Virus record (IMG/VR): IMGVR_UViG_3300028392_000029
Span: 124,001-188,000 of that record
Strand: one strand, 5' to 3'
DNA: 64,000 nucleotides
The notes under the pieces are model-generated. The model saw only the letters and a program-made list of their open reading frames with translations, had not been told where the DNA came from and did no database searches. This document shows positions 42,348-56,939 of this stretch, in pieces. Each line of letters opens with the position of its first letter. Position 1 is the stretch's first letter. The position numbers and the translations under genes are program-made.

Positions 42348-45017
42348 TTAGAACTCAAATAAACTGTTAAATGTGTTTTTTTCTTCTGTACTACGGACAT
42401 CCCATTTAAGTACACCGATAAGATTTTCTAGTTTTTTATCTATAATGGCTTGTTCCATTTCAGTATGGTTAAAAGGCAAATCCTTAAACCATTGCGGCAA
42501 TCTGAGCTCATCTACTGGATAAGCTACGCTTGTGAATCCCAAAGGATTGTCTTTAAGTTTGCAGACGATAACTTTTGCACCATCTGTAATAGCCATGCTA
42601 TATTTGTCATCAAACATACGTTTAAGTGTGTTCCAATTAATGCTTGCACGAACATGCCCGGGCATATTAGCCTTACCAGCCTTTACTTCCTTAGCCTGAT
42701 ATTCTGTAATGTTATTGGCACGTTTAGGACTACCTTTCTCCCAACCGGGACGAACTTTAAAACGTGTTCGGAATTCAGTGATGTGGGCTAGTACAGTATT
42801 TTCGTCAGCACCGGTTAGCACCAACTCAAGAACATCACTTAAAAAGTTTTGAATAAACTCAGGTGTATCACTACGCTTGAGATCCAGCCCCATGGCTTTG
42901 ATCTTGCCAGGCTTGCCATCTACGTCTGCACGTTTGCCTTCTTTGTCATAATACAACACTGCATAGCGTTTCTTAGTAATAAACAGACCTTTAATTGCAA
43001 CAATCTCACGACCAGCTTTGATAACTTCACCGCGTGACTTTGGCACATGGAATGTATCTAACATGAACTGTGGAAAGGTAGTATTAACTTCTTCACCAAT
43101 CTGGTCATATAGCTGAACAACACTTTCTTTAGTCCAGGGAATAACTTTTGAATTGATATCTTTTTGCAGAGTTTTATAAGCACTAAAATAGCACGAGTCT
43201 GTATCACCGTAAATAATAGCCTTGCCCCTGTAGTCATACTCGCCGGCCACAATCTCATTGACCTTGCCAGCCATGTGCTTGACAATTTGTCTGCCTGTCA
43301 GTGTGGTTGACTGCCCGATACGCTTGTCAAAGAATCTACAGCCACTATTAAGAATAGCACCATACAAACTGTTCAAGTTAATCTTCTTGACCAACTGACG
43401 TTTGTCCCAATATTCTTCTTCAATCTTGTTGCCTGCCTTGATAGCATCTTTTAGTTTGGCCTGCATCTCCTTACGTTCGGCATACCAACGTTTGAGCAAG
43501 CCGGGGATAATGCCTTCTGTTTCGTGTGTAAAGATAGTACCATTAGCACTTAACATCCACGGCTGATTGCTTTCAAATATAAGTCTATAGACTTCCGCGG
43601 CACTGAGCACATCACTATCACCGTTTTGCCAATCAATAGTAATGTCTGTGCCAATTTGTTGTTCCATTACGGCTGTATATTCTAGTGATCCGAAGATACC
43701 TTCCCATGCCGCCGCAAATGATTTACCTTTTCCAATTTGCGCTTCAATATAATCGTCAGTTAATGTCTGACGTAATTGTCCAACAATAGTTTCCGGACCC
43801 ATATTCAATGCACGAATGGCTGATGGGTAAAGACTATTAATATCTAGGGAACCAATCCAATCATGAATACCTTCTTTAGGGACAGCGACATACGCACCTG
43901 CGGCTCCTTCATTATCTTCTCGATCATCCATCTTAGTTCGATTGGGTACTTGGAATCCTCTTCGATGGGCTTCGTTGATAATTGCTTGCTCAGTTACAGC
44001 TACCGCACCCATTGTGGTCTGTAGCAACACAGTACACTCATGTGCCAGTGTGTTGGCAAGATCCATAAACTTTAGTTTCTTGTCTAGATCGTCAAGCAGT
44101 TTACAGTCGTTACGGTTGTACTCAATGAACGTTTTAAAGTCATTGTTGTATAATTGGTCGAGCGTACCTTCATATTGTGTTTTACGTTGACCTAGTTCAT
44201 ATTCCGCGATGGCGTCAAGTCTATAACTGTGGCGTTCTTCATACGTATACTTACGGTACAGCTCAAGATAGTCTAAGTGAACGCGACCAATGTAGTCATA
44301 GGTTACACTATCACGACCAAACTTTTCATATTCTCTGCGTTTAGGAAATTGGTCAAATAAACAAAAACGTCGGGTATCTTCTTTGCTTAGTGCTTTAGTA
44401 ACACGATTAGTTGTGTAGGGAATATCAAAACCTTCACTATTCCACCCACTTAGTACATCAGCATCTTTAATCAAATCAAGAAAAACATCTAGCATTTCTG
44501 CTTCTGTTTTATAAAGCATTGTGTTAGGGAAGTCTTTAACTTGCTCTAACGCTTCTTCCATGGTAATAGTCTTTGGAGGAACTGCTAGACATACCATGGT
44601 TTCCATCCACTGTAGGTAGACAGCAATCGCAGTAATTGGCATGAACGCATCGTCTGGACTTGCATAGCCACGCTCTGGATCAAAGTCTACCTCAATATCG
44701 AAAAACGCTACGTTTAGTTTAGGAGCATCTTGATTAATGTAGTTTTCGCTTAGGCAAACAAAGATGGGATTAATATCTGCTTCAAATAATTGCTTACCTG
44801 AATTAATTGCTTGTTCTTTGCGTAGTTCTTTTGTATTTTTACAGATAACCCTGTTAAGTGGGTCGCCGTAGATTGATTGATATTTGCCCTTGGGGTCTTT
44901 GTAGTAAAACGTGTGTTTGACAGGTATGTCACGGAACTCACGCTCACCTTTCTTATTGCGTTCGACAACTTTAATAACATCGTTATTACGGTCAAACCAT
45001 GCATCTACATAGCTCAT
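42348..45017 (-). CDS. Family B DNA polymerase (gp43-like)
   Basis: Exo DIEVD and GWNSEGFD; DINSLYPS; KINLNSLYG; YGDTDS; KKRYA. Confidence 0.97.
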   Translation of the reverse strand: MSYVDAWFDRNNDVIKVVERNKKGEREFRDIPVKHTFYYKDPKGKYQSIYGDPLNRVICKNTKELRKEQAINSGKQLFEADINPIFVCLSENYINQDAPKLNVAFFDIEVDFDPERGYASPDDAFMPITAIAVYLQWMETMVCLAVPPKTITMEEALEQVKDFPNTMLYKTEAEMLDVFLDLIKDADVLSGWNSEGFDIPYTTNRVTKALSKEDTRRFCLFDQFPKRREYEKFGRDSVTYDYIGRVHLDYLELYRKYTYEERHSYRLDAIAEYELGQRKTQYEGTLDQLYNNDFKTFIEYNRNDCKLLDDLDKKLKFMDLANTLAHECTVLLQTTMGAVAVTEQAIINEAHRRGFQVPNRTKMDDREDNEGAAGAYVAVPKEGIHDWIGSLDINSLYPSAIRALNMGPETIVGQLRQTLTDDYIEAQIGKGKSFAAAWEGIFGSLEYTAVMEQQIGTDITIDWQNGDSDVLSAAEVYRLIFESNQPWMLSANGTIFTHETEGIIPGLLKRWYAERKEMQAKLKDAIKAGNKIEEEYWDKRQLVKKINLNSLYGAILNSGCRFFDKRIGQSTTLTGRQIVKHMAGKVNEIVAGEYDYRGKAIIYGDTDSCYFSAYKTLQKDINSKVIPWTKESVVQLYDQIGEEVNTTFPQFMLDTFHVPKSRGEVIKAGREIVAIKGLFITKKRYAVLYYDKEGKRADVDGKPGKIKAMGLDLKRSDTPEFIQNFLSDVLELVLTGADENTVLAHITEFRTRFKVRPGWEKGSPKRANNITEYQAKEVKAGKANMPGHVRASINWNTLKRMFDDKYSMAITDGAKVIVCKLKDNPLGFTSVAYPVDELRLPQWFKDLPFNHTEMEQAIIDKKLENLIGVLKWDVRSTEEKNTFNSLFEF

Positions 45018-45091: not shown

Positions 45092-45098
45092 TATTTAT
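45092..45098 (-). promoter_or_regulatory. T4-late-like promoter motif upstream of the polymerase
   Basis: GATAAATA at the dsbA-like stop. Confidence 0.45.
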
Positions 45099-45355
45099 CA
45101 GATACGCTTAGTGATATCCAAAATTGCTTCAATCTCTTCCCAATCTTCATTGTAAGCCGCCCAATCGCCTTTGTGTGCAATCTTGATAGCTTTGTTAATG
45201 ACACTTGGTTTGATCTGTAATTCTTCTGCTACTGCCTTAACTGTTTCTTTCAATCCTTCTTGCAAGTCTTCAACTTCGCGTAGTACTGTGCTACCTTCAC
45301 TAATCAAACGCTCGAGTTTTGCCTTTTCTTCTGCACCGTATGAACGACCACCCAT
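45098..45355 (-). CDS. T4 DsbA-like dsDNA-binding protein
   Basis: 85 aa helical protein (LKETVKAVAEELQIKPSVINKAIKIAHK...EEIEAILD) with the DsbA pattern. Confidence 0.6.
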   Translation of the reverse strand: MGGRSYGAEEKAKLERLISEGSTVLREVEDLQEGLKETVKAVAEELQIKPSVINKAIKIAHKGDWAAYNEDWEEIEAILDITKRI

Positions 45356-45471: not shown

Positions 45472-47265
45472 TTACGGTGCTGGAGCCGGCGCCGCCTTTG
45501 GAAGTGAATCAATAGCAGTTTGTGCGGATTGTAATGCGGCGTTAATGCCGGCATCGTTGCCGTCATCTGGTAATTGAGCCATGATTTTTCTAATCTCGTC
45601 AACCATTGCTGTTTGTTCCGGTGTTGGTCCAACTGGCACTACAGGAGCTACTGGTTTGTTTGGATCTACTACTGGTTTATTTGGATCAACTGGTTTATTT
45701 GGATCAACTGGTTTATTTGGATCAACTGGTTTATTTGGATCAACTGATGGATCTGGACCTTGTCCTTTATTTGGAGTTAACGCAAGACCAGCGGCACCTC
45801 CTAATGCTGCCGCACCTAATGCAGTTTTAACTGGGTTCTTTGCAATTGCTGAACCTACGCCCATTCCTTTAAGTGCCGCATTTGAAGGAGCTCTTTCAGC
45901 GCCAGCTTTTGCCATTGCTTGCACCTGGGCAGGCGTATACTTTGCTACTTTGTTTGCTCCACGGCCAGTAGTTTGCGCCGCTAATTTGTCAGCTGACTTT
46001 TGAAAGGCAGCTTTGTCTACAGTATTAGCTAATCCTGGTTGGCCTTTCAACCCCTTCCAAGCCGCACTACCAAAGTCTGCTATATCACCAAAGATACCTT
46101 CATCTAGTGTTAATGGTTTGTTCTTTACACTTTCCCAGATGTGTTTTACTGTTGTAGTGTCTGTAACTAAGTCACCGTTGGTTCTATAAAAATTACCATC
46201 AGTGCCTAAGAAATATTCTTTGTCTAATGTTGACATAGCTTCTAACATTTCTAAACGATTGCGTAGACGAACAATAGACTCGGCAGCAGATTCTGCGGCA
46301 GGCATTGTGACTCCATATTGCTTCATAGCGGCTTGAGTCATCGGACCCATTTTGCCATCAGCTTTAATCTTAGCACCTTTCTTGATTAGTTCATTTTGTA
46401 CAGCAAATACTTTAGCATCTCCACCAGGTGGAACTGCAGGTTTACTATCAAACTCACCATGTTTGTAATCACGAGCTAAGTTGGCGGCATCTAATCCTAA
46501 TGATGCGGCAGTGCCAATTCCTGGAACTAAACTAGCTAGACCACTGGCACCAGCCATACCGGCACCTAACCAATCACCTTTCTTAGCGCGATTATACGCA
46601 TCGGCAGCACCGAATGCTAAACCAACACCAGGGATAGCTTTGCCTAACATTTTACCAACACCTTTAGCGCCAGCGTATGTTGCGCCACCGACGGCAGCTT
46701 GTTGTGCTAGGCTTGCTTCGCTTTCAGTTTGATAACCAAAACTCTCAATCAATCTACGCGAGTTAAAAGATTCCTTAACGGCTGCAGGAGTTTTTAATGA
46801 TGCTTGTAATTTTTGTACTAGATCTGCCAACTTAGTCATGTTGGCTTGATTTTGCTCGTTACTGTTTAGTGTAGCATTAGTTCTATCGCTTTGTGTTTGT
46901 ACATCCTTGTCGTACTTACCACCACTTACGCCAAACAGTCTACCAAGGAATGAACTCTTGTTTGCATTCTTAGGAACTAGACCTAAATTAGCTAATTTTT
47001 GGTCATCTTCTTTGCTAGCAGTAGTACTGATACGTGCTGTTGGCTGTCCGCCGTCGCTAGCCGGGTTTAATACAGCAGAAACATAGTTACCGCTTACTGG
47101 ATCATACAATCCTGGCAAGCCGTTTTTCTCAGCCATCTGTTGTAGTGTAAGTGAACGAGCTTGTTCATTACTAGCACCTTGTACGGCAGCTTCTACATCT
47201 CGCAATCTAATACCTTCGGATAGTTCGATTGCATCTAGTTTGTTCATTAATTCACGAATGTTCAT
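45472..47265 (-). CDS. Probable internal head/virion protein with peptidoglycan-binding-like segment and Pro-rich repeats
   Basis: Start moved to MNIRELM; VQNELIKKG...ADGKMGPMTQAAM is PGBD-like; DPNKPV repeats. Confidence 0.55.
   Translation of the reverse strand: MNIRELMNKLDAIELSEGIRLRDVEAAVQGASNEQARSLTLQQMAEKNGLPGLYDPVSGNYVSAVLNPASDGGQPTARISTTASKEDDQKLANLGLVPKNANKSSFLGRLFGVSGGKYDKDVQTQSDRTNATLNSNEQNQANMTKLADLVQKLQASLKTPAAVKESFNSRRLIESFGYQTESEASLAQQAAVGGATYAGAKGVGKMLGKAIPGVGLAFGAADAYNRAKKGDWLGAGMAGASGLASLVPGIGTAASLGLDAANLARDYKHGEFDSKPAVPPGGDAKVFAVQNELIKKGAKIKADGKMGPMTQAAMKQYGVTMPAAESAAESIVRLRNRLEMLEAMSTLDKEYFLGTDGNFYRTNGDLVTDTTTVKHIWESVKNKPLTLDEGIFGDIADFGSAAWKGLKGQPGLANTVDKAAFQKSADKLAAQTTGRGANKVAKYTPAQVQAMAKAGAERAPSNAALKGMGVGSAIAKNPVKTALGAAALGGAAGLALTPNKGQGPDPSVDPNKPVDPNKPVDPNKPVDPNKPVVDPNKPVAPVVPVGPTPEQTAMVDEIRKIMAQLPDDGNDAGINAALQSAQTAIDSLPKAAPAPAP
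45650..45742. repeat. 18-bp coding tandem repeat (DPNKPV)
   Basis: ACTGGTTTATTTGGATCA x4 perfect (45671-45742) plus one variant copy (45650-45667). Confidence 0.95.
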
Positions 47266-47266
47266 T

Positions 47267-48346
47267 TTATTTTCCTTTATTTGGTACACAGTTAGGTACT
47301 GACTTGCTGCCTTTTTTCTTTGTACCAACCATTTTATAACCTTTCCAGCACGGATCATTCATCATTTCATCTATGCCAGCAGGTATGTTTCTGCTGTTTG
47401 AGCCGCCGGCTCGACGTTTAGCACCCAATTCTCCTAGACCATGACTAATTTGTTCAATATTCATAGCAAGTTCGGGGAACAGCTTAGTAATATGTTGCCA
47501 TATTCTAGGATCATCACTTTGAGCCTGTTCTGCTAGATCTTTTAATTGTCTACGAGCTCGCATAATGCGATACTCGATACTACCTGGATTCGCACCTTTA
47601 TGACTGTGAATAGTACTGGACATAGGGTTTTCACGATCAAAGTCTAATGGAGTTTCTGCCACATTACCTTGTAGACCAGGGCCGCCTGGCCCAGGTTTAA
47701 ATCCCATGTTGTCAGATAACCCTTCTTGCATGGTCTTTAACAGCTCTTGGGCTTTTTCAATGCTAATCATATAACGGCCGAGTCTGTTTGGATCAGCGGC
47801 TTTTTCTAACCACTCTTTACTATAACCAGTTGGTGCTGGAGTTGGAGCCGCCGACGGCACGACTGGTTGTTTACCTTGTTCTCTTGCTGTTAGTTCAGCC
47901 TGCGCATCAGCTACACTAACCATGTATCTTCCAAGTCTGTTTGGATCGGAGGCTTTGCGCAACCATTCTGTATCAAACCCACTTAAATCGGCACCTTCTT
48001 TTATACGTTGCGTCGACTCTCTCATTAAGACACGTTCAGCAATAGTCTGAGCGTATTGTTTATACATTGTATTTTTTTGTGTCAATCTTTTGGTAGCATC
48101 TGTTTCAGCTTGATCAAAATACTTTCTGATACTCGATTCACGAGTAATATTTGAAACAGGAGTAGTAATAGGTTGGCCAACAACAGGTTGCTGATAGTGT
48201 TGCATTGCCATTTGTACTGGCAATGTTACTTTGTGTGGATTGCTGCCTTCGTTGATAATAGAAAGAAACTTGGACATGCTATCAACGCCTTCCACAGGCT
48301 TCGAAGATGCCCCATCCATCGCCTGTAGAATACGTTTCATGTCCAT
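47267..48346 (-). CDS. Probable internal head protein
   Basis: Multiple [ILV]xE sites; internal duplication; C-terminal DPCWKGYKMVG...VPNCVP motif. Confidence 0.5.
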   Translation of the reverse strand: MDMKRILQAMDGASSKPVEGVDSMSKFLSIINEGSNPHKVTLPVQMAMQHYQQPVVGQPITTPVSNITRESSIRKYFDQAETDATKRLTQKNTMYKQYAQTIAERVLMRESTQRIKEGADLSGFDTEWLRKASDPNRLGRYMVSVADAQAELTAREQGKQPVVPSAAPTPAPTGYSKEWLEKAADPNRLGRYMISIEKAQELLKTMQEGLSDNMGFKPGPGGPGLQGNVAETPLDFDRENPMSSTIHSHKGANPGSIEYRIMRARRQLKDLAEQAQSDDPRIWQHITKLFPELAMNIEQISHGLGELGAKRRAGGSNSRNIPAGIDEMMNDPCWKGYKMVGTKKKGSKSVPNCVPNKGK

Positions 48347-48350
48347 TGTA

Positions 48351-49886
48351 TTAACCTAATAGACGCTTTGTTAATGCACGAATGCTAGCAACTTCACCTG
48401 ATTCAGCAACCATAGTTCGCTCGTTTTGATTTAAACGACCTGTTAGTTCGCGCATACGTGATAAGTCAGAGGATTCGTTAGTGCCAATTGGATCTTTTTT
48501 GCCTGCTGGTGCTGGCATCATTGCTCCTAACTTCTTGGCTTCTTCAGCATCCTTAGCACCTGATGGATTTGGAACAACGGTCAAATTCTCGTCTGTAATC
48601 TTTTCTTTCTTTTTCTTTTCAGCTAGATACGCTTGAGTTTCTTTGATGTTCTTCCACATAGCGGCAGCGGCAACCTTCTCACCTTTCTCACCGCCACCAG
48701 CAGCCTTGGCCACTTTGTCAAAACTCTTACCTGGCTTACCAATGTCGCCACCTGCTTTAGCTTTCTTAACTACAGCAGATTTTTTCTCTTTGCTTAGACC
48801 TGCGCTTGGTTTTGCGGCTTCCTTAACAGACTTTCCGCCTTTTTCATCTTTGCCAAGACGTCCGGCGATAACATCACCACGTGTTACTTTGTCGTATGGT
48901 TTAGCGTTGTTGGCCAAGTTGCCATCGCCTTTCTTTTTAGCTTCGTCTAATTCAACTTCTTTTTCTTTCTTTGGCTTAGCAGGTGCACCGTCACGATTGT
49001 CAAACTTCTCGCTATCCTTCATACCCCATGTCTTAGCACTTTTAGGAGACATCTTTTGTGCAGGAGCTTTTTCTTTTTTCTCTGCGGCCGACTGCGATTT
49101 AGCATGGGTCTTAATACCCTTACCTGATTTAGCGTTCGAAGAGATTTCGTCGCCGTCGTCGTGATACGTAGTATTGGTATGCTTCATACCGGTATCAGTT
49201 TTAGTTGCTACACCTGTGCGTGTTTTAAATGTATCACCAGTCTTTGATTTGTCGGTAAATTCTTCATCTAAGTCTTCTTCACTGTCAGGAATACCATTGT
49301 GATTTTTATCTAAACGCTTGTGAGCGGCATGCATAGCTTTAGTTTTGCGATCGTAATCACCAGCCATTTTCTTAACATGATCTGGAATTGGCATCGCTTC
49401 GACATATACCATACCAGTACCACCACACTCTGTACATTGTTGCTCACCACCGCGCAACGGACCTTCCATTACTTTTTTATCTTTGGCTTTTTCAGCTTGA
49501 GTCTTTTTAAGATCTTTCATCTTAGATTTAGCTTCTGAAAGCAATTCTTTAATTTTCATACGTTGTCCTTCGCTTAATGTATCGCTGTTATCTAAGTGTT
49601 TACCATATTCACTAAATTTCATCTCATATTCTAAGTAGTGGTATACTGATGCAATATAATCAGCGGCCTTAGTGATCTTAGCTTGCACCCATGCTTCTAA
49701 CTGATCATCGTCATGAACTTGTTTGAACAATTTCATGCTATAGTTAGCTAGTTTGTATAGATCAGCTTTGGCCATTGCGCCTTCGTGATCTAATTCATCA
49801 CTGTGCAAGCCTACTACTGCTGACTGTTCAGTTGGGCTACTTTGTGGTTCCATTTCTGGGTTCATTTGGTCTAAATCTGCTGGCAT
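48351..49886 (-). CDS. Lys/Glu-rich scaffold-like head protein
   Basis: Highly charged low-complexity protein with LSEG, LDEE, LDEA, VKEA sites and one CTECGGTG. Confidence 0.5.
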   Translation of the reverse strand: MPADLDQMNPEMEPQSSPTEQSAVVGLHSDELDHEGAMAKADLYKLANYSMKLFKQVHDDDQLEAWVQAKITKAADYIASVYHYLEYEMKFSEYGKHLDNSDTLSEGQRMKIKELLSEAKSKMKDLKKTQAEKAKDKKVMEGPLRGGEQQCTECGGTGMVYVEAMPIPDHVKKMAGDYDRKTKAMHAAHKRLDKNHNGIPDSEEDLDEEFTDKSKTGDTFKTRTGVATKTDTGMKHTNTTYHDDGDEISSNAKSGKGIKTHAKSQSAAEKKEKAPAQKMSPKSAKTWGMKDSEKFDNRDGAPAKPKKEKEVELDEAKKKGDGNLANNAKPYDKVTRGDVIAGRLGKDEKGGKSVKEAAKPSAGLSKEKKSAVVKKAKAGGDIGKPGKSFDKVAKAAGGGEKGEKVAAAAMWKNIKETQAYLAEKKKKEKITDENLTVVPNPSGAKDAEEAKKLGAMMPAPAGKKDPIGTNESSDLSRMRELTGRLNQNERTMVAESGEVASIRALTKRLLG

Positions 49887-49909
49887 GAGTATACTCCGTT
49901 ATCTTTATA

Positions 49910-49916
49910 TATTTAT
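49910..49916 (-). promoter_or_regulatory. T4-late-like promoter motif
   Basis: GATAAATA before the scaffold-like gene. Confidence 0.55.
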
Positions 49917-50389
49917 CGTTTGATGCTTCCGCCAGTCATTAGATTCACATCTATATCTAGGGCGTTTTTAGCTGTGCCGTCTTTGTTTTTAGGCTGTTTT
50001 ACTGGTTTATTCTTATATACCGGGCCTACTGATACATTAGCGGCACTGGTTGCTCCAGCGGTTGCTGATTCTGACACATCTTCGGGTTTACCAAACGGAT
50101 GTACTTCAATCCACTTGCCGCCTTCATTTTTAATCCATTTTTCCTGATGAAACTTACTTTTGACAATGCCGTGCATTTTTAATGCCTGTTCAGGACTATC
50201 TCTAAATCCCTGTTGGCGAGCTTCATGTTCGCGATGGTTACTGATCATAGCTTGATGTAACCTACCATCTTTAAAAATGTATAATAGATTTGATTCGTCT
50301 TCTGCAGGATTGCGGCGCTGACTACTAAATCCTGTGCGATTGTTATCGTAATTGTTATAGTGACCTTCGTCAAGTTCGTGCATTTTCAT
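49913..50389 (-). CDS. Hypothetical (probable head) protein
   Basis: N-terminus MKMHELDEG; internal VSESA. Confidence 0.55.
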   Translation of the reverse strand: MKMHELDEGHYNNYDNNRTGFSSQRRNPAEDESNLLYIFKDGRLHQAMISNHREHEARQQGFRDSPEQALKMHGIVKSKFHQEKWIKNEGGKWIEVHPFGKPEDVSESATAGATSAANVSVGPVYKNKPVKQPKNKDGTAKNALDIDVNLMTGGSIKR

Positions 50390-50390
50390 T

Positions 50391-50684
50391 TTATTTTCCT
50401 ACAGGTTTTTCGCCAGTTAAGTACGGCTTACTAAACCACAGTTGAAACCATTCTGGGGTTCCGGGACGAATATGATGCTTACGCTCTAGCTCTTGTTTGC
50501 TCATACCAGTAACACTGATATTACTGCCTTGATTAGCACGGTATTCGTGTAGTCTAGCTTCGCCACCTAACCCGCCTAGTCCTGCTAGTGCTTTCATTTC
50601 GTGTATAGGATCACTCGGATCTAAATAGCAGTCATCTGAACTATCTTGATTTAAATCCTGCGTAGTAATTCTATACTGTTTCAT
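50391..50684 (-). CDS. Hypothetical protein
   Basis: Start moved to MKQYRIT (ATGA overlap with dps). Confidence 0.6.
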   Translation of the reverse strand: MKQYRITTQDLNQDSSDDCYLDPSDPIHEMKALAGLGGLGGEARLHEYRANQGSNISVTGMSKQELERKHHIRPGTPEWFQLWFSKPYLTGEKPVGK

Positions 50685-51121
50685 TTTAAACTTGACCTCA
50701 GCATCCAACTGTGCTTCTTATGTGCATCCTGTCGATCAGCTAAGAAATTACTCAGCCCGTGGTCACCATGCGCTTCAGCCATATCAAACGTAATGCGAAA
50801 TATCTCAGCCATTCTGTCACTATCTGTTAATAATTCTTTTAGCATACCGCTCCAATCTGGTACATGATTTTCATCTTCTACCACAGTCAGCATACTGAAT
50901 TTTTGTAAACTAGCCGGTGTATAAATCTGTAGAGCACGTAGATGTTCCGCAAACGGATCAATTGCACCATATACTTCCTCGTATATGGTTTGAAACAGTT
51001 CGTGTAACTGACCAAACAACGGTCCTTCTACATTCCAGTGAAAGTTATGCGCTTTTAGATAAAAACTAAATTCACTAGCAAAAGCTGTTTTTAATGATAA
51101 GTGATATTTGTCGTGTTCCAT
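50681..51121 (-). CDS. dps: Dps-family ferritin-like protein
   Basis: HNFHWNVEG..F..LHELF...YE, DPFAEHLR, HKKHSWML. Confidence 0.92.
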   Translation of the reverse strand: MEHDKYHLSLKTAFASEFSFYLKAHNFHWNVEGPLFGQLHELFQTIYEEVYGAIDPFAEHLRALQIYTPASLQKFSMLTVVEDENHVPDWSGMLKELLTDSDRMAEIFRITFDMAEAHGDHGLSNFLADRQDAHKKHSWMLRSSLK

Positions 51122-52416
51122 TATATACCGTATTTGTTTCTTTTGGCTTTATTTACAGGGCTAGTTTTGTTAGTGTCAGCGGGCTCTTCGCTCTTGCTAA
51201 ACTTGCTAATTGTTTTTCCATCAGTGGGGACAGTTTTCATAGCCGATCGAATCTTATTATCGTCTTCTTTGGTGTAAGGATGATGTGTATTATACTTTTC
51301 AGCCCAGGTATCTTGCGGACTGTCTACAGCTTTTATACTCTCGCCGTCGGCCATGGCCATGGCCATCATCATGCGATTCATGTGATAGATACGATCGTAC
51401 CCGCCGATATCGCGTGTTCGAATTACGCCCAGGCTGGCGGCATCGTGGTGGGGGTGTCGATGACTAGTTTTACCTTCGCGTACAAATTCGTTAGCTTTCA
51501 TTTCTCTTAATACCCTGTTAGCTTCTTTAATCAAATTAAAGGCTTTTAAATTCTTTTTTGGTGTACTACTATTTACATCAACTGTACTATTCTGTTTTGT
51601 AATAGTGCCGACCCCGGCAGCTTCTTCGTCAGTTTTAGTATATACTTGTTGCGGTTTTTTATGCCCCTCACCTCGTTCCATTTTATCAGGATCTTTGGAT
51701 TTTTCTTTTTCAAAGTACTTGCGCATTTCTTCTGCACTGGTCGTTGGCTTAGCTTTAACAGGTTTAGTCATGAATCCCATTAAGCCTTCATCAGTTACTG
51801 GTTCTGCTACAGGTTTTTCTTTTTTAGCTCGTTTTACTTTTTCAGGATGTTGGCCTACTGCGGCTACTACTGTATCAAAATAGTGTTGACCATTTACTTC
51901 TAGATTAGGATCTGTACCAGCGGCTCGATAAAATGCGTCCATGTTACCAGCACGAGCCGCATTGCGTAGATCAGTTGCTGAGCTTACTCTGGGACTTGGT
52001 ATATGGATGATTTTAGCAAAGTTAAAATAACCATGTGTACTTTCCTTGCCATTGTATTGATTTAATAATTTTCCAGCCCATGCCCAGTCAGTTGCATCAG
52101 TTATATAAGCTACAGTTGCACCATCTCCAACTTCTGCATAAATCTTAGAGGCCAGTGTGATAACTGTAGATTCACCTAACACATGTCCTTCAATGCTGGG
52201 ATCAATTGCAGACATCCATGCTGCCTTAACATCAAACGGCAACGGATCGTTGGTGCCGGTTGTACTAGGATTAGTACCTATGTACCATTGATGACCTGCA
52301 TGTTTAACAGCTTCCCAAACTTTGGCATGCCCTTGATGCGGTGGATTGAACCGACCAAAGCAGAATGCCGCAGTTACCTTAGTATGAGTTGATTCAAAAA
52401 GTTCACGTAAATTCAT
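51121..52416 (-). CDS. HxGH nucleotidyltransferase (cytidylyltransferase/NadM-like) with charged C-terminal extension
   Basis: FCFGRFNPPHQGH, NDPLPF, SSATDLR. Confidence 0.75.
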   Translation of the reverse strand: MNLRELFESTHTKVTAAFCFGRFNPPHQGHAKVWEAVKHAGHQWYIGTNPSTTGTNDPLPFDVKAAWMSAIDPSIEGHVLGESTVITLASKIYAEVGDGATVAYITDATDWAWAGKLLNQYNGKESTHGYFNFAKIIHIPSPRVSSATDLRNAARAGNMDAFYRAAGTDPNLEVNGQHYFDTVVAAVGQHPEKVKRAKKEKPVAEPVTDEGLMGFMTKPVKAKPTTSAEEMRKYFEKEKSKDPDKMERGEGHKKPQQVYTKTDEEAAGVGTITKQNSTVDVNSSTPKKNLKAFNLIKEANRVLREMKANEFVREGKTSHRHPHHDAASLGVIRTRDIGGYDRIYHMNRMMMAMAMADGESIKAVDSPQDTWAEKYNTHHPYTKEDDNKIRSAMKTVPTDGKTISKFSKSEEPADTNKTSPVNKAKRNKYGI

Positions 52417-53609
52417 TATGGTGTCCAGGCTGGTATAGTTCCAGACGGAGTTTCGATACTACTACGCGGAACTAGTTTAATATGATCATCACCTTTTTTA
52501 TCGTAGTGTACCCAGCCCTCTGGGTTGGTTACTTTAATCTCACCGGGATCTTTATCTAATTGTGCAATTACACTGTTCTTCAATTGCATAATATCGTCAA
52601 ACAAATTAAACATTGCAGGTAGTGCTCCTGGGAACATCTTTGCACGTTCTTGTACCTTAGCCAACTGTGTTGGACTTACAATTGTTGGATTAGATTCCAT
52701 CCACATCATAAAATTATGACCGACATTGTGTAATTGTCCTTGCTTACTCATAGTATTAACATATCTGTAAACAATATTTTTAAATCCACTTACTCCGGGT
52801 AGTGGTGATAAGAATTGATCAATTTCAGCTGAATGTTTTTTAATTTCTGCTTCAACAATAGATATAGCTTGAGAATCAACTTCCGGCTGCATCTGGGTAT
52901 AGTATGGACCTAGTACGATCAGTTGAGATGTTGAATTAAACTCTTCAAAACTGTCTTTGGGTTGTTGCGTATGGTCGGCGTCTCCGAATGTTTCAAATAT
53001 GCCATGACCAACAACCATTGCATGCGCTGTAGAAATTTGTTGTCCTAGATCAGTATCCTGTGCAATATGATAAACTGTTCCGCTTTTTGGATTTGGATGT
53101 AAATTATATATTCCATCAGCATCTGGGGTTGGTTGCCCTAAGAATAACCCATCGGCGTAGACAAATCCTCTAAAATCTTCAGGGGTAGCTTTTTCAAACA
53201 CTGGATGTAAGAAACTAAATTCTCTAGCAAACTCTTTACGTTGCTCTTGTTCTTCGGGGGTCTTTGGATTACCACTCTTGTTAAGAATAAAATTATAAAT
53301 TCCTTGCTGTGTGGTAAACTCGTCTAATGTACTTGTACCAGTGCCGCCACGCAACCAACCATTGTGGTTAGTCAATATAAATGTACCATTCTCATCTCTG
53401 CCCCAATACACTTGCGGAGCACCGTCCCACTTGTATCGAACACCCTTGGCATTTTTGCCTATGGCTTTGATATGTTCCAGCGCCTTAATTGCACCAGCAC
53501 TGCCATTTAAAAATGTTAGATCCTCTGGATGATTGAATGCCCTACCTACTTTTTTCTTAACTTCTTCAGCGGCTGGGGCTTCTCTTAAAAATAATTCTCT
53601 TAGTAACAC
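52416..53609 (-). CDS. Phage protein with ligase-like KxDG motif (DUF6267-like)
   Basis: FNHPEDL...RYKWDGAP.VYWG; PEGWV...IKLVPR. Confidence 0.55.
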   Translation of the reverse strand: MLLRELFLREAPAAEEVKKKVGRAFNHPEDLTFLNGSAGAIKALEHIKAIGKNAKGVRYKWDGAPQVYWGRDENGTFILTNHNGWLRGGTGTSTLDEFTTQQGIYNFILNKSGNPKTPEEQEQRKEFAREFSFLHPVFEKATPEDFRGFVYADGLFLGQPTPDADGIYNLHPNPKSGTVYHIAQDTDLGQQISTAHAMVVGHGIFETFGDADHTQQPKDSFEEFNSTSQLIVLGPYYTQMQPEVDSQAISIVEAEIKKHSAEIDQFLSPLPGVSGFKNIVYRYVNTMSKQGQLHNVGHNFMMWMESNPTIVSPTQLAKVQERAKMFPGALPAMFNLFDDIMQLKNSVIAQLDKDPGEIKVTNPEGWVHYDKKGDDHIKLVPRSSIETPSGTIPAWTP

Positions 53610-53611
53610 GA

Positions 53612-53983
53612 TTAGTCCTTATACTTGCCATCGGCAACGTGCTTACAAGTTTCATCGTGTATTTTTTTACATACTTTACTGCAAAGTTCCTCATCTAATT
53701 CGTCTGGTAGTTCGCGAATCGGAAATTTTTTAATGTACAATTTATAGCTAGCCTGTACAGGCACCTTAAACATATTTGGATGTGTTGCACGATCAGCTTT
53801 CAAACGGTCTATGCACTTGGAAATAACTGGATGGACATGACGTCGATACGATCTGTCATCGTTATGCATAAAATGAATTAAATCATCCGGAAGGTCGTAG
53901 TTAATCTCTCTGCCGTCATTCTTTGGCGAGACAAAGTCTAAATCTTTGAAGATGGTGCCTTCTAATAGCTCATTTATGCGCAT
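53612..53983 (-). CDS. Hypothetical (probable head) protein
   Basis: N-terminus MRINELLEG; first gene after an ATAAATA motif. Confidence 0.55.
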   Translation of the reverse strand: MRINELLEGTIFKDLDFVSPKNDGREINYDLPDDLIHFMHNDDRSYRRHVHPVISKCIDRLKADRATHPNMFKVPVQASYKLYIKKFPIRELPDELDEELCSKVCKKIHDETCKHVADGKYKD

Positions 53984-54029: not shown

Positions 54030-54036
54030 TATTTAT
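54030..54036 (-). promoter_or_regulatory. T4-late-like promoter motif
   Basis: Intergenic GATAAATA heading the head-protein block. Confidence 0.55.
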
Positions 54037-54055: not shown

Positions 54056-54685
54056 CTATGCTTTAACGATACGTTCAATCTTTGTTATTACGCCACCGAG
54101 ATGCATTTTAGTCAACAGTAGTGTATTGTCGCCTGTTACATAGAAGTGTGTTCCGCCCCAACTTCTTGATTTTCCTAGCTCTTTTTTGCAACTTTTAGTC
54201 AGTTTTAGTTTGTCACGGCCAGCCGCCCATTCAACAAACGCTTGATAATCTTGGTTAGTTTTACCTAAAGTCACTCGATAATCGTAATTTGTTTTAGGCA
54301 TTATTATAGTATTAGCCGCTAGAGGTGAATCTTTTGGTGGCTCAGATATATATTTCACATTGCTACTATCTAATTTAGACAGCAGAGTAACATAATCAAG
54401 GTTGTTAGTATATACGCTGACCCACGGAGATTCTACCCTAATTTCTATATCCTTCATTTTCTTCAAGGCAGTTGCAAGTCTAATAGCATAATCTAGCTGA
54501 TCTTGAGTTTTGATATTATTAATACGCCACACATCGTCGGGCTTTTGAAGTAAAGAAGTTTTACTTAGTAGTTTTAATGCAGTTTCCATATCACCGCTTC
54601 TAAACGAACTAGCGCCAGAACATATCAACACAATTTTGTATTGATATGTTCCTTTAAATAAACTTCTAGTTGTTTTGTACAACAT
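54056..54685 (-). CDS. Hypothetical protein
   Basis: 209 aa ORF overlapping the clpA 3' end. Confidence 0.65.
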   Translation of the reverse strand: MLYKTTRSLFKGTYQYKIVLICSGASSFRSGDMETALKLLSKTSLLQKPDDVWRINNIKTQDQLDYAIRLATALKKMKDIEIRVESPWVSVYTNNLDYVTLLSKLDSSNVKYISEPPKDSPLAANTIIMPKTNYDYRVTLGKTNQDYQAFVEWAAGRDKLKLTKSCKKELGKSRSWGGTHFYVTGDNTLLLTKMHLGGVITKIERIVKA

Positions 54686-56939
54686 CTTCTAAGTTGCTCT
54701 CAATAGCCAGTAATGCAATTTTAGATACTTTTGGTTTAGCAATTAACGAAATTGCATCGCCATCAACACTAATAGTGACCCAGCCGCCATTTTTAAGATC
54801 TCCAAACAACATCAATCGAGCAAGGTCGCGTTTAATTTCCTTGTCAATAACACGCTGTAACGGACGAGCACCCATCTTAGGATCAAAGCCTTTTTCGATG
54901 AGCCAATTAACTGCTTCCTTATCGATCTTAACTCGGATACCTTTATCTTTAACTTGGTCTTTAAGTTGATCTATAAACTTATTAACAATTTTTATCATTG
55001 TTTCTTTTCCAAGTTTATTAAATGTAACAACACCATCTAAACGATTGCGGAACTCCGGAGTTAAGAATTTCTTCAAATCAGCATCGCTATAGTCTTTATC
55101 TTGCTTACCAAATCCAATAGCATTTTTGTCTGCTGATTGTGCTCCGGCATTAGTAGTAAGGATAAGAACAATATTACGGCAGTCAGCTTTTTTGCCATTT
55201 GATCCGGTAATAAATCCGTTATCCATAAGCTGTAGCAATACAGTTATTACATCTGGATGCGCTTTTTCAATCTCATCTAGCAACAGTACAGCATTAGGTG
55301 CTTCTTGAATACTGGTAATTAGTTGACCCGCATTTTCTTCAAATCCAACATAACCGGGAGGGCTGCCGATCAACTTACTGATACTGTGTTTTTCTTGATA
55401 TTCACTCATATCAAAGCGCAGTAACTTAACACCCAAGTTTTTAGCAAGTGACTTAGCAGTTTCGGTTTTACCAGTACCAGTCGGCCCCATGAATACAAAC
55501 GATCCAACGGGTTTATTTTCTGTTTTAAGTCCAGCCTGTGCAACAACAATCTTATCAACGATTTCGGTGATAGCAAGTTCTTGCCCATACACTTCTGTTT
55601 CAAGTTTAGTTTGTAAACTAATTAAATTAACACTTTCAGTTTCTGAAACTTGCTCTTCCGGCATATTGACCATCTTAGCTAGTTCGAATTGAATTTCACG
55701 CTCGCCGATAATGCGCTCATCAGCTAGTTTGAGATTGAAGCGTGAGCAAGCTACATCAATTAAATCAATGGCCTTGTCCGGAAGTTTTTTATCTGTTTGA
55801 TACTTAACTGACAATTTAATTGCCGCATCAATTGCATCGTCCTTGATCTTAACATTATGGAATCCTTCGTAGTATTTCTTAATACCTTTAAGGATCTGTT
55901 TAGTAACTTCTGTTGTAGGCTCGTCAACAGTAATGCGTTGGAAACGACGCATGAGCGCACGATCCTTTTCGAAGTGCTTACGATATTCTTCCCAGGTAGT
56001 CGATGCTACAACTTTAATATTGCCTTTGCTTAGTGCAGGCTTCATCATGTTGGCAAGATCGTTCGCTGAATTGCTTGCCGACCCAGCACCACTAATCATG
56101 TGTGCTTCGTCAATAAACAAGACAGTCTTACCTTTCTTTTGTAGGGCTTTAATAACATGCTTAAAGCGTTCTTCAAAGTCTCCGCGATATTTAGAGCCAG
56201 CTAACATAGCACTGATGTCTAGATTATAAACTGTATACTCTTTCAAGAAATCAGGAACAGCACCATTTACAATATTATGAGCCATGCCCTCGGCGATCGC
56301 AGTCTTACCTACACCAGGGTCACCAACTAAGATCACGTTGTTTTTGCTACGACGACCTAGTGCTAACGCAATATTTTCTAATTCGTCAACTCTGCCAATA
56401 ACTGGATCGATTTTGTTTTTCTTAACTTCTTGATTCAGATTAGTAGTAAATGCCTGAAGGGCTTTATCACTATGCGAATCAGCTGGGCTATCGTCCGGAC
56501 CATTTTCCATATTATTATTTAAATATTCAGCAAATTTATCTTTATCGATATTAGCTTGTGCAACAAAAAAGTGCGCCCAACTACGTTTCTCGCCCATCAT
56601 AGCCAAGAATACATCCGTTGGTTCAATACGCTGTCGCCCGTTGAATAGGACTTGAGTAAACGCCCTATTAAGTACACGCTCTACACTTTGAGTTTTCTTA
56701 GGTTTAACCACTACATCTGGTACTGTAATTTCACTACATTTATTATGTAGATAATCTTGTAGGTTTGTTTTAAGGGAATTAGCATCAGCGCCGAATCCTT
56801 GAATACAGTTAGTAAACCCATCTTCTGCAAGCATAGCAAACAACAGATGTTCTATTGTTAGATATTCGTGATGAAGTTTTTTAGAAGTTTCTATAGCTCT
56901 TTCAAAGACTGCTTGAAGATTATCGCTAGGTTCGACCAT
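54666..56939 (-). CDS. clpA: ClpA-like Hsp100 AAA+ unfoldase
   Basis: HEYLTIEHLL N-domain; GDPGVGKT; LFIDEAH; GPTGTGKT; LLLDEIEKAH; IGF loop; no ClpB coiled-coil. Confidence 0.93.
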   Translation of the reverse strand: MVEPSDNLQAVFERAIETSKKLHHEYLTIEHLLFAMLAEDGFTNCIQGFGADANSLKTNLQDYLHNKCSEITVPDVVVKPKKTQSVERVLNRAFTQVLFNGRQRIEPTDVFLAMMGEKRSWAHFFVAQANIDKDKFAEYLNNNMENGPDDSPADSHSDKALQAFTTNLNQEVKKNKIDPVIGRVDELENIALALGRRSKNNVILVGDPGVGKTAIAEGMAHNIVNGAVPDFLKEYTVYNLDISAMLAGSKYRGDFEERFKHVIKALQKKGKTVLFIDEAHMISGAGSASNSANDLANMMKPALSKGNIKVVASTTWEEYRKHFEKDRALMRRFQRITVDEPTTEVTKQILKGIKKYYEGFHNVKIKDDAIDAAIKLSVKYQTDKKLPDKAIDLIDVACSRFNLKLADERIIGEREIQFELAKMVNMPEEQVSETESVNLISLQTKLETEVYGQELAITEIVDKIVVAQAGLKTENKPVGSFVFMGPTGTGKTETAKSLAKNLGVKLLRFDMSEYQEKHSISKLIGSPPGYVGFEENAGQLITSIQEAPNAVLLLDEIEKAHPDVITVLLQLMDNGFITGSNGKKADCRNIVLILTTNAGAQSADKNAIGFGKQDKDYSDADLKKFLTPEFRNRLDGVVTFNKLGKETMIKIVNKFIDQLKDQVKDKGIRVKIDKEAVNWLIEKGFDPKMGARPLQRVIDKEIKRDLARLMLFGDLKNGGWVTISVDGDAISLIAKPKVSKIALLAIESNLEDVVQNN

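What the first reader, a model, noticed from the sequence alone, without database searches (positions are those of the whole stretch)
45472..53983. Late gene block whose proteins share an N-terminal M-x-[ILM]-x-E-L tag and many [ILV]xE sites: candidate capsid-targeting and maturation code
Seen: five starts MRINELLEG, MLLRELFLRE, MNLRELFES, MKMHELDEG and MNIRELMNKLDAIELSEG, plus recurring internal LSEG, IKEG, LDEA, VKES, VSES and LDEG sites between domains. The block follows an ATAAATA motif. Known: the T4 prohead protease cleaves after [LI]xE, and T4 internal proteins carry a short N-terminal capsid-targeting sequence. Inference: unrelated cargo proteins, including enzymes, are tagged for head packaging and ejection.
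Basis: partly seen in the sequence, partly recalled or inferred. Interest (0 to 1): 0.7.

Follow-up and report, generated by a model that had tools for sequence, protein, structure and literature searches.

The report
Head-targeting tags on jumbo-phage cargo proteins
An uncultured lake-water jumbo phage related to T4 puts the same short N-terminal peptide on a set of otherwise unrelated, fast-evolving proteins (two look like enzymes); the peptide looks and behaves like T4's capsid-targeting, protease-cleaved tag, so it probably marks proteins loaded into the phage head, though no virion data exist to prove it.

Summary
All five N-termini exist on the minus strand at the stated coordinates. Genome-wide, M-x-[ILM]-x-E-L opens 6 of 204 genes where 0.27 are expected, and 5 of them lie in this 9-gene block. 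The tagged proteins share nothing else. Conservation is at the peptide level, because codons vary synonymously among relatives. 63 of 64 homologues of p1 and nearly all of the 120 listed p2 homologues keep the tag, while cyanophage versions of the same enzymes lack it.

Each tag in the window ends in hydrophobic-x-Glu. The phage encodes a T4-type gp21 protease, scaffold and gp23 capsid protein. [LIV]xE[GSA] density is highest in the scaffold, which serves as an internal positive control, and next highest in block proteins. This was replicated in a 345-kb relative. p6 copies the capsid protein's cleavage junction. Two NATAAATA late-promoter motifs precede the block's two sub-operons, and a gp55-like late sigma factor is encoded.

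Best reading: a T4-like capsid-targeting and maturation code on a hypervariable cargo locus. Packaging and cleavage are inferred, not shown. I file it as a new variant of a known kind, with moderate to high interest.

The parts
54030..54036 (-). NATAAATA-type late-promoter-like motif (cGATAAATAc), 53 nt upstream of p1
   Evidence: 29 of the 38 ATAAATA copies in the genome lie within 120 nt upstream of a same-strand gene start (P = 3e-29). A gp55-like late sigma factor is encoded.
53612..53983 (-). p1, 123 aa, unknown fold. Tag MRINELLE|G occupies codons 1-8 (53960-53983).
   Evidence: 63 of 64 homologues start M-R-I-x-E-L-[LF]-E-[GNS]. AF2 model has pLDDT 83 with a low-confidence N-terminal element. 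No PDB fold match.
52416..53609 (-). p2, 397 aa, DUF6267, divergent ATP-dependent ligase-like nucleotidyltransferase with an invariant KWDG motif. GTG start. Tag MLLRELFLRE|A occupies codons 1-10 (53580-53609).
   Evidence: Pfam E = 6e-16. Nearly all of the 120 listed homologues are tagged. E5 and E10 are at least 90% conserved and followed by a variable linker. In the AF2 model, residues 2-10 form a helix, 10-19 are disordered and the domain starts near residue 24. The top structural matches are almost all RNA/DNA ligases, Z up to 7.6.
51121..52416 (-). p3, 431 aa, cytidylyltransferase-like N-domain (HxGH motif). Tag MNLRELFE|S occupies codons 1-8 (52393-52416). An internal fossil tag, MKANEFVRE|G, lies at residues 306-315 (51472-51501).
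   Evidence: Pfam and PHROG matches. Residues 306-431 are homologous to a stand-alone tagged 126-aa gene in a relative, L013:8644-9024. The cyanophage P-HM1 cytidylyltransferase genes beside its p2 homologue, which have the same GRFxPP..GH motif, are untagged.
50681..51121 (-). p4, Dps/ferritin-like, 146 aa, untagged. It is 80% conserved in G006. A different, tagged 136-aa gene is encoded just downstream of p3 in the 95% relatives, where no p4 match was found.
50391..50684 (-). p5, about 97 aa, untagged small protein.
49913..50389 (-). p6, 158 aa. Tag MKMHELDE|G occupies 50366-50389. A C-terminal module, VSE|SATAGATSAANVS (50030-50077), copies the capsid protein's junction LAE|SATAGATSAGNVA.
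   Evidence: The module is kept in every p6-family member of the relatives, while the N-terminal region is hypervariable.
49910..49916 (-). Second NATAAATA late-promoter-like motif, 30 nt upstream of p7.
   Evidence: A metatranscriptome contig covering p7 ends at 49909, which is weak support.
48351..49886 (-). p7, 511 aa, low-complexity Lys/Glu-rich protein with no N-terminal tag. It has an internal tag-like MKIKELLSE|A (49530-49559) and six hxE[small] sites.
   Evidence: second-densest protein in the genome. Sites 104, 116, 139 and 493 are conserved with a variable P2 residue.
47267..48346 (-). p8, 359 aa. It has its own conserved N-terminus, MDMKRILQAMDG, and a C-terminal CWKGY..VPNCVP knuckle (47279-47350).
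45472..47265 (-). p9, 597 aa. It has a long tag, MNIRELMNKLDAIELSE|G (47215-47265), a Gly-rich hydrophobic segment, and a weak match to a peptidoglycan-binding domain that is below the Pfam threshold.
   Evidence: The tag end [LI]xE|[GA] is kept in all orthologues.

Best explanation
The block is a hypervariable cargo locus of a T4-superfamily jumbo phage. The phage has a Rak2-like capsid protein and comes from lake water.

An 8-17 residue N-terminal peptide, consensus M-[RKN]-[ILA]-x-E-[LF]-[LFM]-(x0-2)-E followed by G/S/A/N, acts like the T4 capsid-targeting sequence. The proposed steps are:
1. The peptide forms a two-turn amphipathic helix on a flexible linker.
2. The helix docks the protein onto the scaffold core while the prohead assembles.
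3. The gp21-type prohead protease cuts it off after hydrophobic-x-Glu.
4. Further hxE[small] sites inside the low-complexity proteins let the protease trim or split them.
5. The mature proteins stay in the head with the DNA and are presumably ejected into the host. They include a ligase-like enzyme, a cytidylyltransferase-like enzyme, a Gly-rich protein with a weak peptidoglycan-binding-domain match, and small proteins of unknown fold.

Transcription is from T4-type late promoters (NATAAATA) read by a gp55-like sigma factor.

Shown here: the tag, its peptide-level conservation, its modular spread, the motif statistics, the presence of the protease, scaffold and capsid protein, and the promoter motif. 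Inferred: binding to the core, cleavage, packaging and ejection.
For: 1. Non-random, clustered tag on unrelated proteins.
2. Selection acts on the peptide, not the nucleotides. Synonymous codon changes occur within and between genomes. p1 keeps the tag in 63 of 64 homologues, and nearly all of the 120 listed p2 homologues keep it.
3. The tag is a modular add-on. Homologues of p2 and p3 in cyanophage P-HM1 lack it. Non-orthologous genes inserted in the same locus of relatives carry it, and none of the genes in the roughly 10 kb upstream flank do. A stand-alone tagged gene is fused inside p3 here.
4. All five window tags end in [LF]-x-E. T4 IPII and IPIII start MKTYQEFIAE|A. T4 mutational data place targeting at residues 4 and 7 and processing at residues 8 and 10 (PMC9026906). 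T4 Alt, an enzyme, is processed at ITE-6 (PMC5694885).
5. An S77 gp21-type protease, a gp22-like scaffold, an acidic gp67/68-like core protein and a gp23 capsid protein are encoded.
6. [LIV]xE[GSA] density ranks the scaffold first (p = 2e-8), followed by p7, p3 and p9. In the 345-kb relative G006 the order is scaffold, a tagged protein, then the p7 orthologue. The sites are conserved with a free P2 residue.
7. The p6 family carries the capsid protein's own cleavage junction.
8. Three more tagged genes lie in structural modules. One is between the portal and the core/protease genes and is conserved in 276 contigs. One is next to the baseplate-hub and tape-measure genes and has its own ATAAATA. 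One is between a virion structural protein and the large terminase.
9. Cargo proteins diverge fast, at 33-59% identity to G006, while the protease is 98% and the capsid protein 91% identical. This resembles the T-even internal-protein loci.
10. A tagged protein in G006 has a phage tail lysozyme domain.
11. AF2 places the p2 tag as a separate helix followed by a disordered linker.
12. Late-promoter motifs and a late sigma factor are present.
Against: - There are no virion proteomic, cleavage or ejection data for this clade. The homology searches run for p1, p2, p7 and p9 found at most distant or short-motif matches in cultured phages, and p3, p6 and p8 were not searched there.
- The one cultured capsid relative scanned in full, Rak2-like phage CBB, shows no comparable tag family.
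- Four block genes (Dps-like p4, p5, p7, p8) lack the N-terminal tag.
- The head-module 79-aa protein has Asp, not Glu, at position 10, and no hxE follows its tag.
- The protease-peptide co-fold gave no answer.
- The tag is not demonstrably homologous to the T4 capsid-targeting sequence.
- The block sits among replication, chaperone and lysis genes, not in the head module.
Confidence: 0.6

Rival explanations
1. The shared N-terminal peptide is a recognition tag for another machine, not the prohead. One candidate is the phage-encoded ClpA/B-like AAA+ unfoldase, with the DnaJ-like protein and peptide deformylase encoded just upstream. In this reading the tag serves timed unfolding, degradation or chaperoning, or it targets the proteins to another cellular site.
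For: The block lies directly downstream of a ClpA/B-family ATPase, a deformylase and a J-domain protein in this genome and in all relatives examined. Short N-terminal motifs are known recognition signals for Clp unfoldases (general knowledge).
Against: This does not explain several observations:
- the hydrophobic-x-Glu ending of the tags;
- the ranking of hxE[small] density with the scaffold first;
- the capsid-protein junction copied in p6;
- the tagged genes inside the head and packaging modules;
- the likeness to the T4 capsid-targeting sequence.
Confidence: 0.12
2. The tag targets proteins into the virion, to the head or elsewhere, but is not removed. In this reading the hxE enrichment is a by-product of helical, Glu/Lys-rich low-complexity composition rather than a set of cleavage sites.
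For: The block proteins are richer in Glu (6.6% against 4.5%). The head-module 79-aa protein has Asp at position 10. In T4, Asp at position 10 allows targeting without processing (PMC9026906). Some of the listed sites are not conserved.
Against: The enrichment is specific to hxE followed by a small residue (3.9-fold), whereas hxD is depleted (0.71-fold) and hydrophobic residues are rarer in the block. At conserved sites P3, P1 and P1' are kept while P2 varies. E8/E10 is at least 90% conserved or invariant.
Confidence: 0.12
3. The conserved 5' end acts at the RNA or DNA level. It could be a translation-initiation enhancer in a phage that makes little use of Shine-Dalgarno sequences, or a recombination linker for shuffling gene cassettes.
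For: Block genes have almost no Shine-Dalgarno sequence and are tightly coupled from stop to start. The locus shows gene turnover.
Against: Codons for the conserved residues differ freely (CGC/CGT/AGA, GAA/GAG, CTA/TTA/CTT/TTG) while the amino acids stay fixed, and position 4 is free. Most of the other roughly 196 genes lack the motif although they share the same translation context.
Confidence: 0.05
4. The pattern is chance or a compositional artefact of AT-rich N-termini.
For: Lys, Ile, Asn, Glu and Leu are common after start codons in AT-rich phages.
Against: There are 6 observed against 0.27 expected using N-terminal position-specific frequencies. The tags are clustered. The tag is conserved across hundreds of metagenomic homologues.
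Confidence: 0.01

Closest known systems
T4 capsid-targeting sequence (CTS) of internal proteins IPI, IPII and IPIII, and the N-propeptide of Alt
   Same: - It is a short N-terminal peptide shared by unrelated, non-essential, fast-evolving proteins.
- It ends in the gp21 motif [L/I]-x-E.
- The hydrophobic spacing i, i+3, i+4 before the P1 Glu is the same (T4 Y4, F7, I8, E10; p2 here L3, L6, F7, L8, E10).
- An enzyme cargo has a precedent in Alt.
- The genes lie outside the head module.
- The same protease, scaffold and capsid protein families are present.
   Different: - The consensus sequence differs and homology is not demonstrable.
- The tag is often 8 rather than 10 residues long, and p9 has a 17-residue version.
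- There are many more tagged genes: at least 8 in 60% of this genome, and more candidate matches to the loosened motif, some probably chance, in a 345-kb relative.
- The cargo includes ligase-like and cytidylyltransferase-like proteins.
- There are internal fossil tags and additional shared short motifs.
- The function is untested.
Propeptides of phiKZ, 201phi2-1 and SPN3US inner-body and ejection proteins
   Same: These are giant phages that load many proteins, including enzymes, into the head. A T4-related prohead protease trims them after Glu, with redundant sites (PMC9026906, PMC5694885).
   Different: Those propeptides are long and have no shared N-terminal consensus, and the motif is S/A/G-x-E. 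Here P3 is L/I/V/F and the tag is short and shared. The capsid protein and protease here are of the T4/Rak2 type.
Encapsulin cargo-loading peptides
   Same: A short modular peptide directs diverse enzymes into an HK97-fold shell.
   Different: Those peptides are C-terminal, are not cleaved, have no scaffold or protease, and belong to a cellular nanocompartment. The resemblance is by analogy only.
Rak2-like jumbo phages (RaK2, GAP32, CBB, Phosso, Atu_ph07)
   Same: The capsid protein is 68-73% identical and the DNA polymerase 44-49% identical. The portal, small protein, core protein, protease, scaffold and capsid protein genes are in the same order. The capsid junction xRE|SATAGATSAGN is the same.
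   Different: CBB has no comparable tag family. Only its small head protein starts similarly, MLDEIFE|A. The homology searches run for p1, p2, p7 and p9 found no Rak2-like match.

Membership tests
T4-type capsid-targeting sequence (CTS) system | A short N-terminal peptide shared by otherwise unrelated proteins | tested here: met
T4-type capsid-targeting sequence (CTS) system | The peptide ends in the prohead-protease motif, hydrophobic-x-Glu | tested here: met
   The window tags end in LLE8, LRE10, LFE8, LDE8 and LSE17, and these endings are kept in orthologues. The exception is the head-module 79-aa protein, which has D10.
T4-type capsid-targeting sequence (CTS) system | The genome encodes a gp21-type (S77) protease, a scaffold core and a gp23 capsid protein | tested here: met
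   PF03420 E = 6e-27 and PF07068 E = 1e-79. Scaffold PHROG match and acidic core protein.
T4-type capsid-targeting sequence (CTS) system | Sequence homology to the T4 tag MKTYQEFIAE | tested here: inconclusive
   Only a pattern-level likeness (E-[FL]-hydrophobic..E) was found. The peptide is too short for a homology test.
T4-type capsid-targeting sequence (CTS) system | The tag is necessary and sufficient for incorporation into proheads and is cleaved in vivo | not testable with these tools
   The co-fold of the protease with p1 residues 1-30 gave no answer.
T4-type capsid-targeting sequence (CTS) system | The mature proteins are present in virions and are ejected | not testable with these tools
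   There is no cultured member. The homology searches run for p1, p2, p7 and p9 found at most distant or short-motif matches in cultured phages, and CBB has no comparable tag family.
T4-type capsid-targeting sequence (CTS) system | Cargo genes are hypervariable while the tag is kept, as in the T-even internal-protein loci | tested here: met
phiKZ/SPN3US-type ejection-protein propeptides | Long propeptides cleaved at S/A/G-x-E, with no shared N-terminal consensus | tested here: not met
   The tags are 8-17 aa long, are shared, and have P3 = L/I/V/F.
T4-type late promoter | A (T)ATAAATA box upstream of late genes, plus a gp55-family sigma factor | tested here: met
   29 of 38 motif copies lie within 120 nt upstream of same-strand starts. 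Late sigma factor PHROG match, E = 1e-70. Transcription timing itself was not tested.
Pfam DUF6267 (p2) | Match above the curated cut-off | tested here: met
   59 bits against a cut-off of 27. The precomputed Pfam annotation is PF19782 for all 120 listed homologues.
ATP-dependent polynucleotide ligase / nucleotidyltransferase superfamily (p2) | KxDG motif I and the nucleotidyltransferase fold | tested here: inconclusive
   K60-W-D-G63 is invariant. The top structural matches are almost all ligases, but Z is at most 7.6 and Foldseek E is at least 0.15.

The most novel reading that the evidence does not exclude
An abundant, uncultured clade of lake-water jumbo phages uses a readable peptide code to load a large, rapidly changing arsenal into the capsid for co-injection. 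The code has three parts:
- the N-terminal tag;
- hxE[small] cut sites;
- a few mobile short motifs, namely the capsid-junction mimic, the CWxGY..NCVP knuckle and the ENLTVxPNPSGA motif.

The arsenal would hold at least 8, and perhaps more, unrelated proteins, including an RNA-ligase-like and a cytidylyltransferase-like enzyme pair. In cyanophages the same pair works untagged in the cytoplasm. If this is right, virion cargo could be predicted from sequence alone, and cytoplasmic enzymes would have been recruited as injected first-strike or anti-defence factors.
Probability: 0.35. Interest if true: 0.75.

Novelty: new variant of a known kind. Interest (0 to 1): 0.6.

Why it matters
If the tag is a capsid-targeting and maturation signal, head cargo of a widespread uncultured phage clade can be read directly from metagenomes. 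The small tagged head protein alone is found in 276 viral contigs. The tag would point to dozens of candidate injected proteins, which are likely anti-defence or takeover factors, including enzymes that are cytoplasmic in other phages.

It would also give a second, independent natural example of the T4 capsid-targeting principle, with a different consensus. That helps define what the prohead core actually recognises, and it could extend protein-packaging tools beyond T4.

Tried and rejected
- Co-folding the protease with p1 residues 1-30 gave no answer. This is not evidence either way.
- PDB sequence searches for p2 and p3 found nothing useful.
- The fold search for p1 found no significant match.
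- Searches for cultured homologues, to borrow virion proteomics, gave little. p1 had none. p2 matched only cyanophage P-HM1 at 25% identity. p7 and p9 matched only through short motifs.
- A full scan of the Rak2-like phage CBB, whose record annotates some genes as 'structural protein', found no comparable tag family, so the association of tag with virion could not be tested there. Its only N-terminal cluster, MLPF.., looks like a tandem paralogue family.
- The bS21-phage paper is not evidently about this clade.
- Lake metatranscriptome contigs show that the block's sequence is present in RNA libraries, but they give no timing and no clean transcript 5' ends.
- Nucleotide-level explanations were rejected because of synonymous variation. 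Chance was rejected on statistics.
- The loosened pattern M-x-[ILMVA]-x-[EDQ]-[LFIM] is too permissive on its own. It picks up internal Met residues and probable non-tags, such as a possible heme-oxygenase-like N-terminus in G006 (judged by eye only).


Full report
**Context**

The window is bases 124001-188000 of a 223,176-bp IMG/VR viral contig, about 60% complete by CheckV. It is a T4-superfamily jumbo phage.
- The family-B DNA polymerase (42348-45017, minus strand) is 44-49% identical to those of Phosso, Atu_ph07 and the Rak2-like phages.
- The capsid protein is 68-73% identical to theirs.
- Lake-water metatranscriptome libraries hold 100%-identical contigs of the block.

**Genes in the block** (all minus strand)

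| Gene | Coordinates | Length | N-terminus / note |
|---|---|---|---|
| p1 | 53612-53983 | 123 aa | MRINELLEG |
| p2 | 52416-53609 | 397 aa | GTG start, MLLRELFLRE |
| p3 | 51121-52416 | 431 aa | MNLRELFES |
| p4 | 50681-51121 | 146 aa | Dps/ferritin-like, untagged |
| p5 | 50391-50684 | about 97 aa | untagged |
| p6 | 49913-50389 | 158 aa | MKMHELDEG |
| p7 | 48351-49886 | 511 aa | no N-terminal tag |
| p8 | 47267-48346 | 359 aa | no N-terminal tag |
| p9 | 45472-47265 | 597 aa | MNIRELMNKLDAIELSEG |

The p9 start is one base after p8's stop, and its orthologues begin at the same place.

Annotation:
- p2 belongs to DUF6267.
- p3 has a cytidylyltransferase-like N-domain with a GRFNPPHQGH motif.
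- p9 has a Gly-rich segment shared with phage 'endolysin/peptidase' PHROGs, and a peptidoglycan-binding-domain match that is below the Pfam threshold.
- p8 ends in a CWKGY..VPNCVP knuckle that matches several PHROGs of unknown function.

**Is the tag more than chance?**

- In all ORFs of 40 aa or more in the genome, M-x-[ILM]-x-E-L occurs at six in-frame ATGs. Five are in the block. The sixth opens a 79-aa gene between the portal gene and the prohead-core and protease genes.
- Counting p2's GTG start and leaving out p7's internal copy, 6 of 204 gene starts carry the motif. Position-specific N-terminal composition predicts 0.27. None of 5000 column shuffles reached 6. The chance of five of six falling in a nine-gene run is about 2e-5.
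- Only 1 of about 1230 internal in-frame Met codons has the motif.
- An unbiased all-against-all comparison of N-terminal 10-mers returns this family as the largest cluster in the proteome.
- BLASTP finds no other similarity among the tagged proteins; all E-values exceed 0.03.

**Peptide or nucleotide signal?**

- The codons of the conserved residues differ between genes.
- They also differ between orthologues: CGC/CGT/AGA, GAA/GAG, CTA/TTA/CTT/TTG.
- Position 4 is free.
- Selection is therefore on the peptide.

**Relatives**

- Thirteen related loci were found, 65-100% identical in p2. They keep the tag on orthologues and also on non-orthologous genes inserted in the same locus. Examples are MRAKEFLRRLNES, MRAKEFITEH, MRAKEFLSEQ, MRLRELIRES, MKMTDLINEN and MKINDLLTEE. 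No gene in the roughly 10-kb upstream flank has it.
- Residues 306-431 of p3 are homologous to a stand-alone tagged 126-aa gene of a relative. The internal MKANEFVRE|G is therefore a fused tag at a domain junction.
- Among the 120 listed DUF6267 homologues (44-67% identity), nearly all start MLLRELFx[RQ]E[AN], MRAKEFLKEAE or MRLRELFxEA. In the alignment, E5 and E10 are at least 90% conserved and are followed by a variable linker.
- 63 of 64 p1 homologues start M-R-I-x-E-L-[LF]-E-[GNS].
- In cyanophage P-HM1, the DUF6267 homologue and the adjacent cytidylyltransferases form the same gene pair but lack the tag. The tag is a lineage-specific add-on.
- Against the near-complete relative G006 (345 kb), the identities are protease 98%, capsid protein 91%, scaffold 84% and DNA polymerase 86%. 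The block proteins are only 33-59% identical, with their tags intact.

**Link to head maturation**

- The genome encodes a gp20 portal, an acidic gp67/68-like core protein, an S77 gp21-type protease, a gp22-like scaffold and a gp23 capsid protein, in the T4 gene order.
- Every window tag ends in [LF]-x-E followed by G, S or A.
- T4 IPII and IPIII start MKTYQEFIAE|A.
- In T4, residues 4 and 7 carry targeting, residues 8 and 10 carry processing, and Asp at position 10 blocks processing but not targeting (PMC9026906).
- Alt, an enzyme, is processed at ITE-6 (PMC5694885).
- p2's tag matches T4's in length and at positions 7, 8 and 10.

The density of [LIV]xE[GSA] was then measured across the whole proteome.
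- It is highest in the scaffold homologue (10 sites in 367 aa, p = 2e-8). T4 gp21 destroys its own scaffold, so this protein is a natural positive control.
- The next-ranked proteins are p7, p3 and p9, with one non-block protein between p3 and p9.
- The block as a whole is 3.9-fold enriched (p = 2e-7). Meanwhile hxD is depleted and hydrophobic residues are rarer.
- G006 replicates the result: scaffold first, then a tagged protein of a second cluster, then the p7 orthologue.
- At the conserved sites, P3, P1 and P1' are kept and P2 varies. One example is LSE|A, LTE|A, LAE|A and LME|A.
- IKEG in p8 and LDEA in p7 are not conserved.

The p6 family is hypervariable, but every member keeps [LIV]xE|[ST]A[ST][AV]GATS[AS]A[NS][IV]. 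This matches the capsid protein's own junction, YLAE|SATAGATSAGNV here and LRE|SATAGATSAGNI in CBB. RaK2's capsid protein runs slightly smaller than predicted on gels, which is consistent with a short propeptide (PMC3622015).

**More tagged genes outside the window**

- A 79-aa protein starting MILRELFYID lies between the portal and the core genes. Its N-terminus is almost invariant in the 80 contigs kept out of 276.
- A 384-aa protein starting MKIYEIISE|Q has its own ATAAATA and lies beside the baseplate-hub and tape-measure genes.
- A 203-aa protein starting MNFTELYTKIRAIDE|N lies between a virion structural protein and the large terminase.
- G006 adds a second cluster of matches to the loosened motif, some of which are probably chance. 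One of them is a protein with a phage tail lysozyme domain.

**Structure**

- The AF2 model of p2 (pLDDT 91) shows residues 2-10 as a low-confidence helix, residues 10-19 as disordered, and the domain starting near residue 24. Its best structural matches are almost all ATP-dependent RNA or DNA ligases (49 of the top 50, Z up to 7.6), and K60-W-D-G63 is invariant. This is suggestive, not conclusive.
- The p1 model (pLDDT 83) has a weakly defined N-terminal element and no known fold.

**Late expression**

- ATAAATA occurs 38 times in the genome, fewer than composition predicts. 29 copies lie within 120 nt upstream of a same-strand gene start (P = 3e-29).
- Two copies are in the block, at 54036-54030 before p1 and at 49916-49910 before p7.
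- A gp55-like late sigma factor is encoded.
- Timing itself was not measured.

**Rivals**

- A tag for the adjacent ClpA/B-like ATPase, DnaJ and deformylase cluster cannot be excluded. It explains none of the protease-linked features.
- Targeting without cleavage is possible for some members, such as the 79-aa protein with D10.
- RNA-level or recombination explanations conflict with the synonymous variation.
- Chance is excluded.

**Limits**

- There is no virion, cleavage or ejection evidence.
- The co-fold gave no answer.
- No cultured phage carries the tag family. CBB was scanned in full and is negative.

**Comparison and verdict**

The system works like the T4 capsid-targeting sequence with gp21. 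It meets every defining feature that can be tested from sequence. Homology to the T4 tag cannot be shown, and the functional features are untested. It differs from T4 in several ways:
- the consensus sequence and the tag length;
- the number and kinds of cargo, including enzyme-like proteins that are untagged in cyanophages;
- internal fused tags;
- a set of mobile short motifs shared among the cargo proteins.

I rate it a new variant of a known kind, with 0.6 confidence in the mechanism and 0.6 interest.

Noticed in passing
genome 90975-91721 (minus strand), outside the window; L017:975-1721: A 248-aa protein encoded just downstream of the capsid protein gene has an N-terminal ubiquitin-fold domain (PF00240, E = 3e-12).
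   Followed up: no
window 47279-47350 (C-terminus of p8); also L016:11215-12384, L013:10221-11192 and L011:15252-16598: A Cys-flanked knuckle, CWxGY..K-rich..VPNCVP, recurs as a mobile module in different block proteins of relatives. Atlas structure hits (leads only) place it on viral proteins that carry DUF6321, DUF2213, Peptidase_S78_2, NUDIX or cytidylyltransferase domains. It may be another capsid-associated short motif.
   Followed up: partly
window 48822-48956 (p7 residues 311-355): The short motif GDGNLANNxKPYDKVTxGDVIAGRLGKD is 72-76% identical to a segment in 166 T4-like cyanophage records, some annotated as cytidyltransferase. The rest of p7 has no such match.
   Followed up: no
window 48540-48590 (around p7 residue 434) and genome 32082-32693: The motif ENLTVxPNPSGA..EEAKxLGAM is shared by p7 and by the tagged 203-aa protein next to the large terminase gene.
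   Followed up: partly
window 54056-58256: The phage encodes a ClpA/B-family double AAA+ ATPase (54666-56939), a peptide deformylase (56939-57424) and a J-domain protein (57399-58256) directly upstream of the block. A putative lysis cassette, judged from N-terminal sequences only, lies further upstream (about 58.3-60.5 kb).
   Followed up: partly
window 45098-45355: An 85-aa protein between the block and the DNA polymerase gene is 89-99% conserved among relatives. It weakly matches the T4 DsbA-type transcriptional regulator (PF11126, below the cut-off; PHROG 639). An ATAAATA lies at its 3' end, 81 nt upstream of the polymerase gene.
   Followed up: no
window 45472-53983, upstream regions of the genes: Almost none of the block genes has a Shine-Dalgarno sequence. 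Most starts abut the previous stop. This hints at a host with weak Shine-Dalgarno usage.
   Followed up: no
CBB genome (L126-L144), 344-355 kb: Eleven proteins of 215-285 aa start MLPF[PS]R.., ten of them in a tandem array at 344-355 kb. They are probably a paralogue family rather than a shared tag.
   Followed up: no
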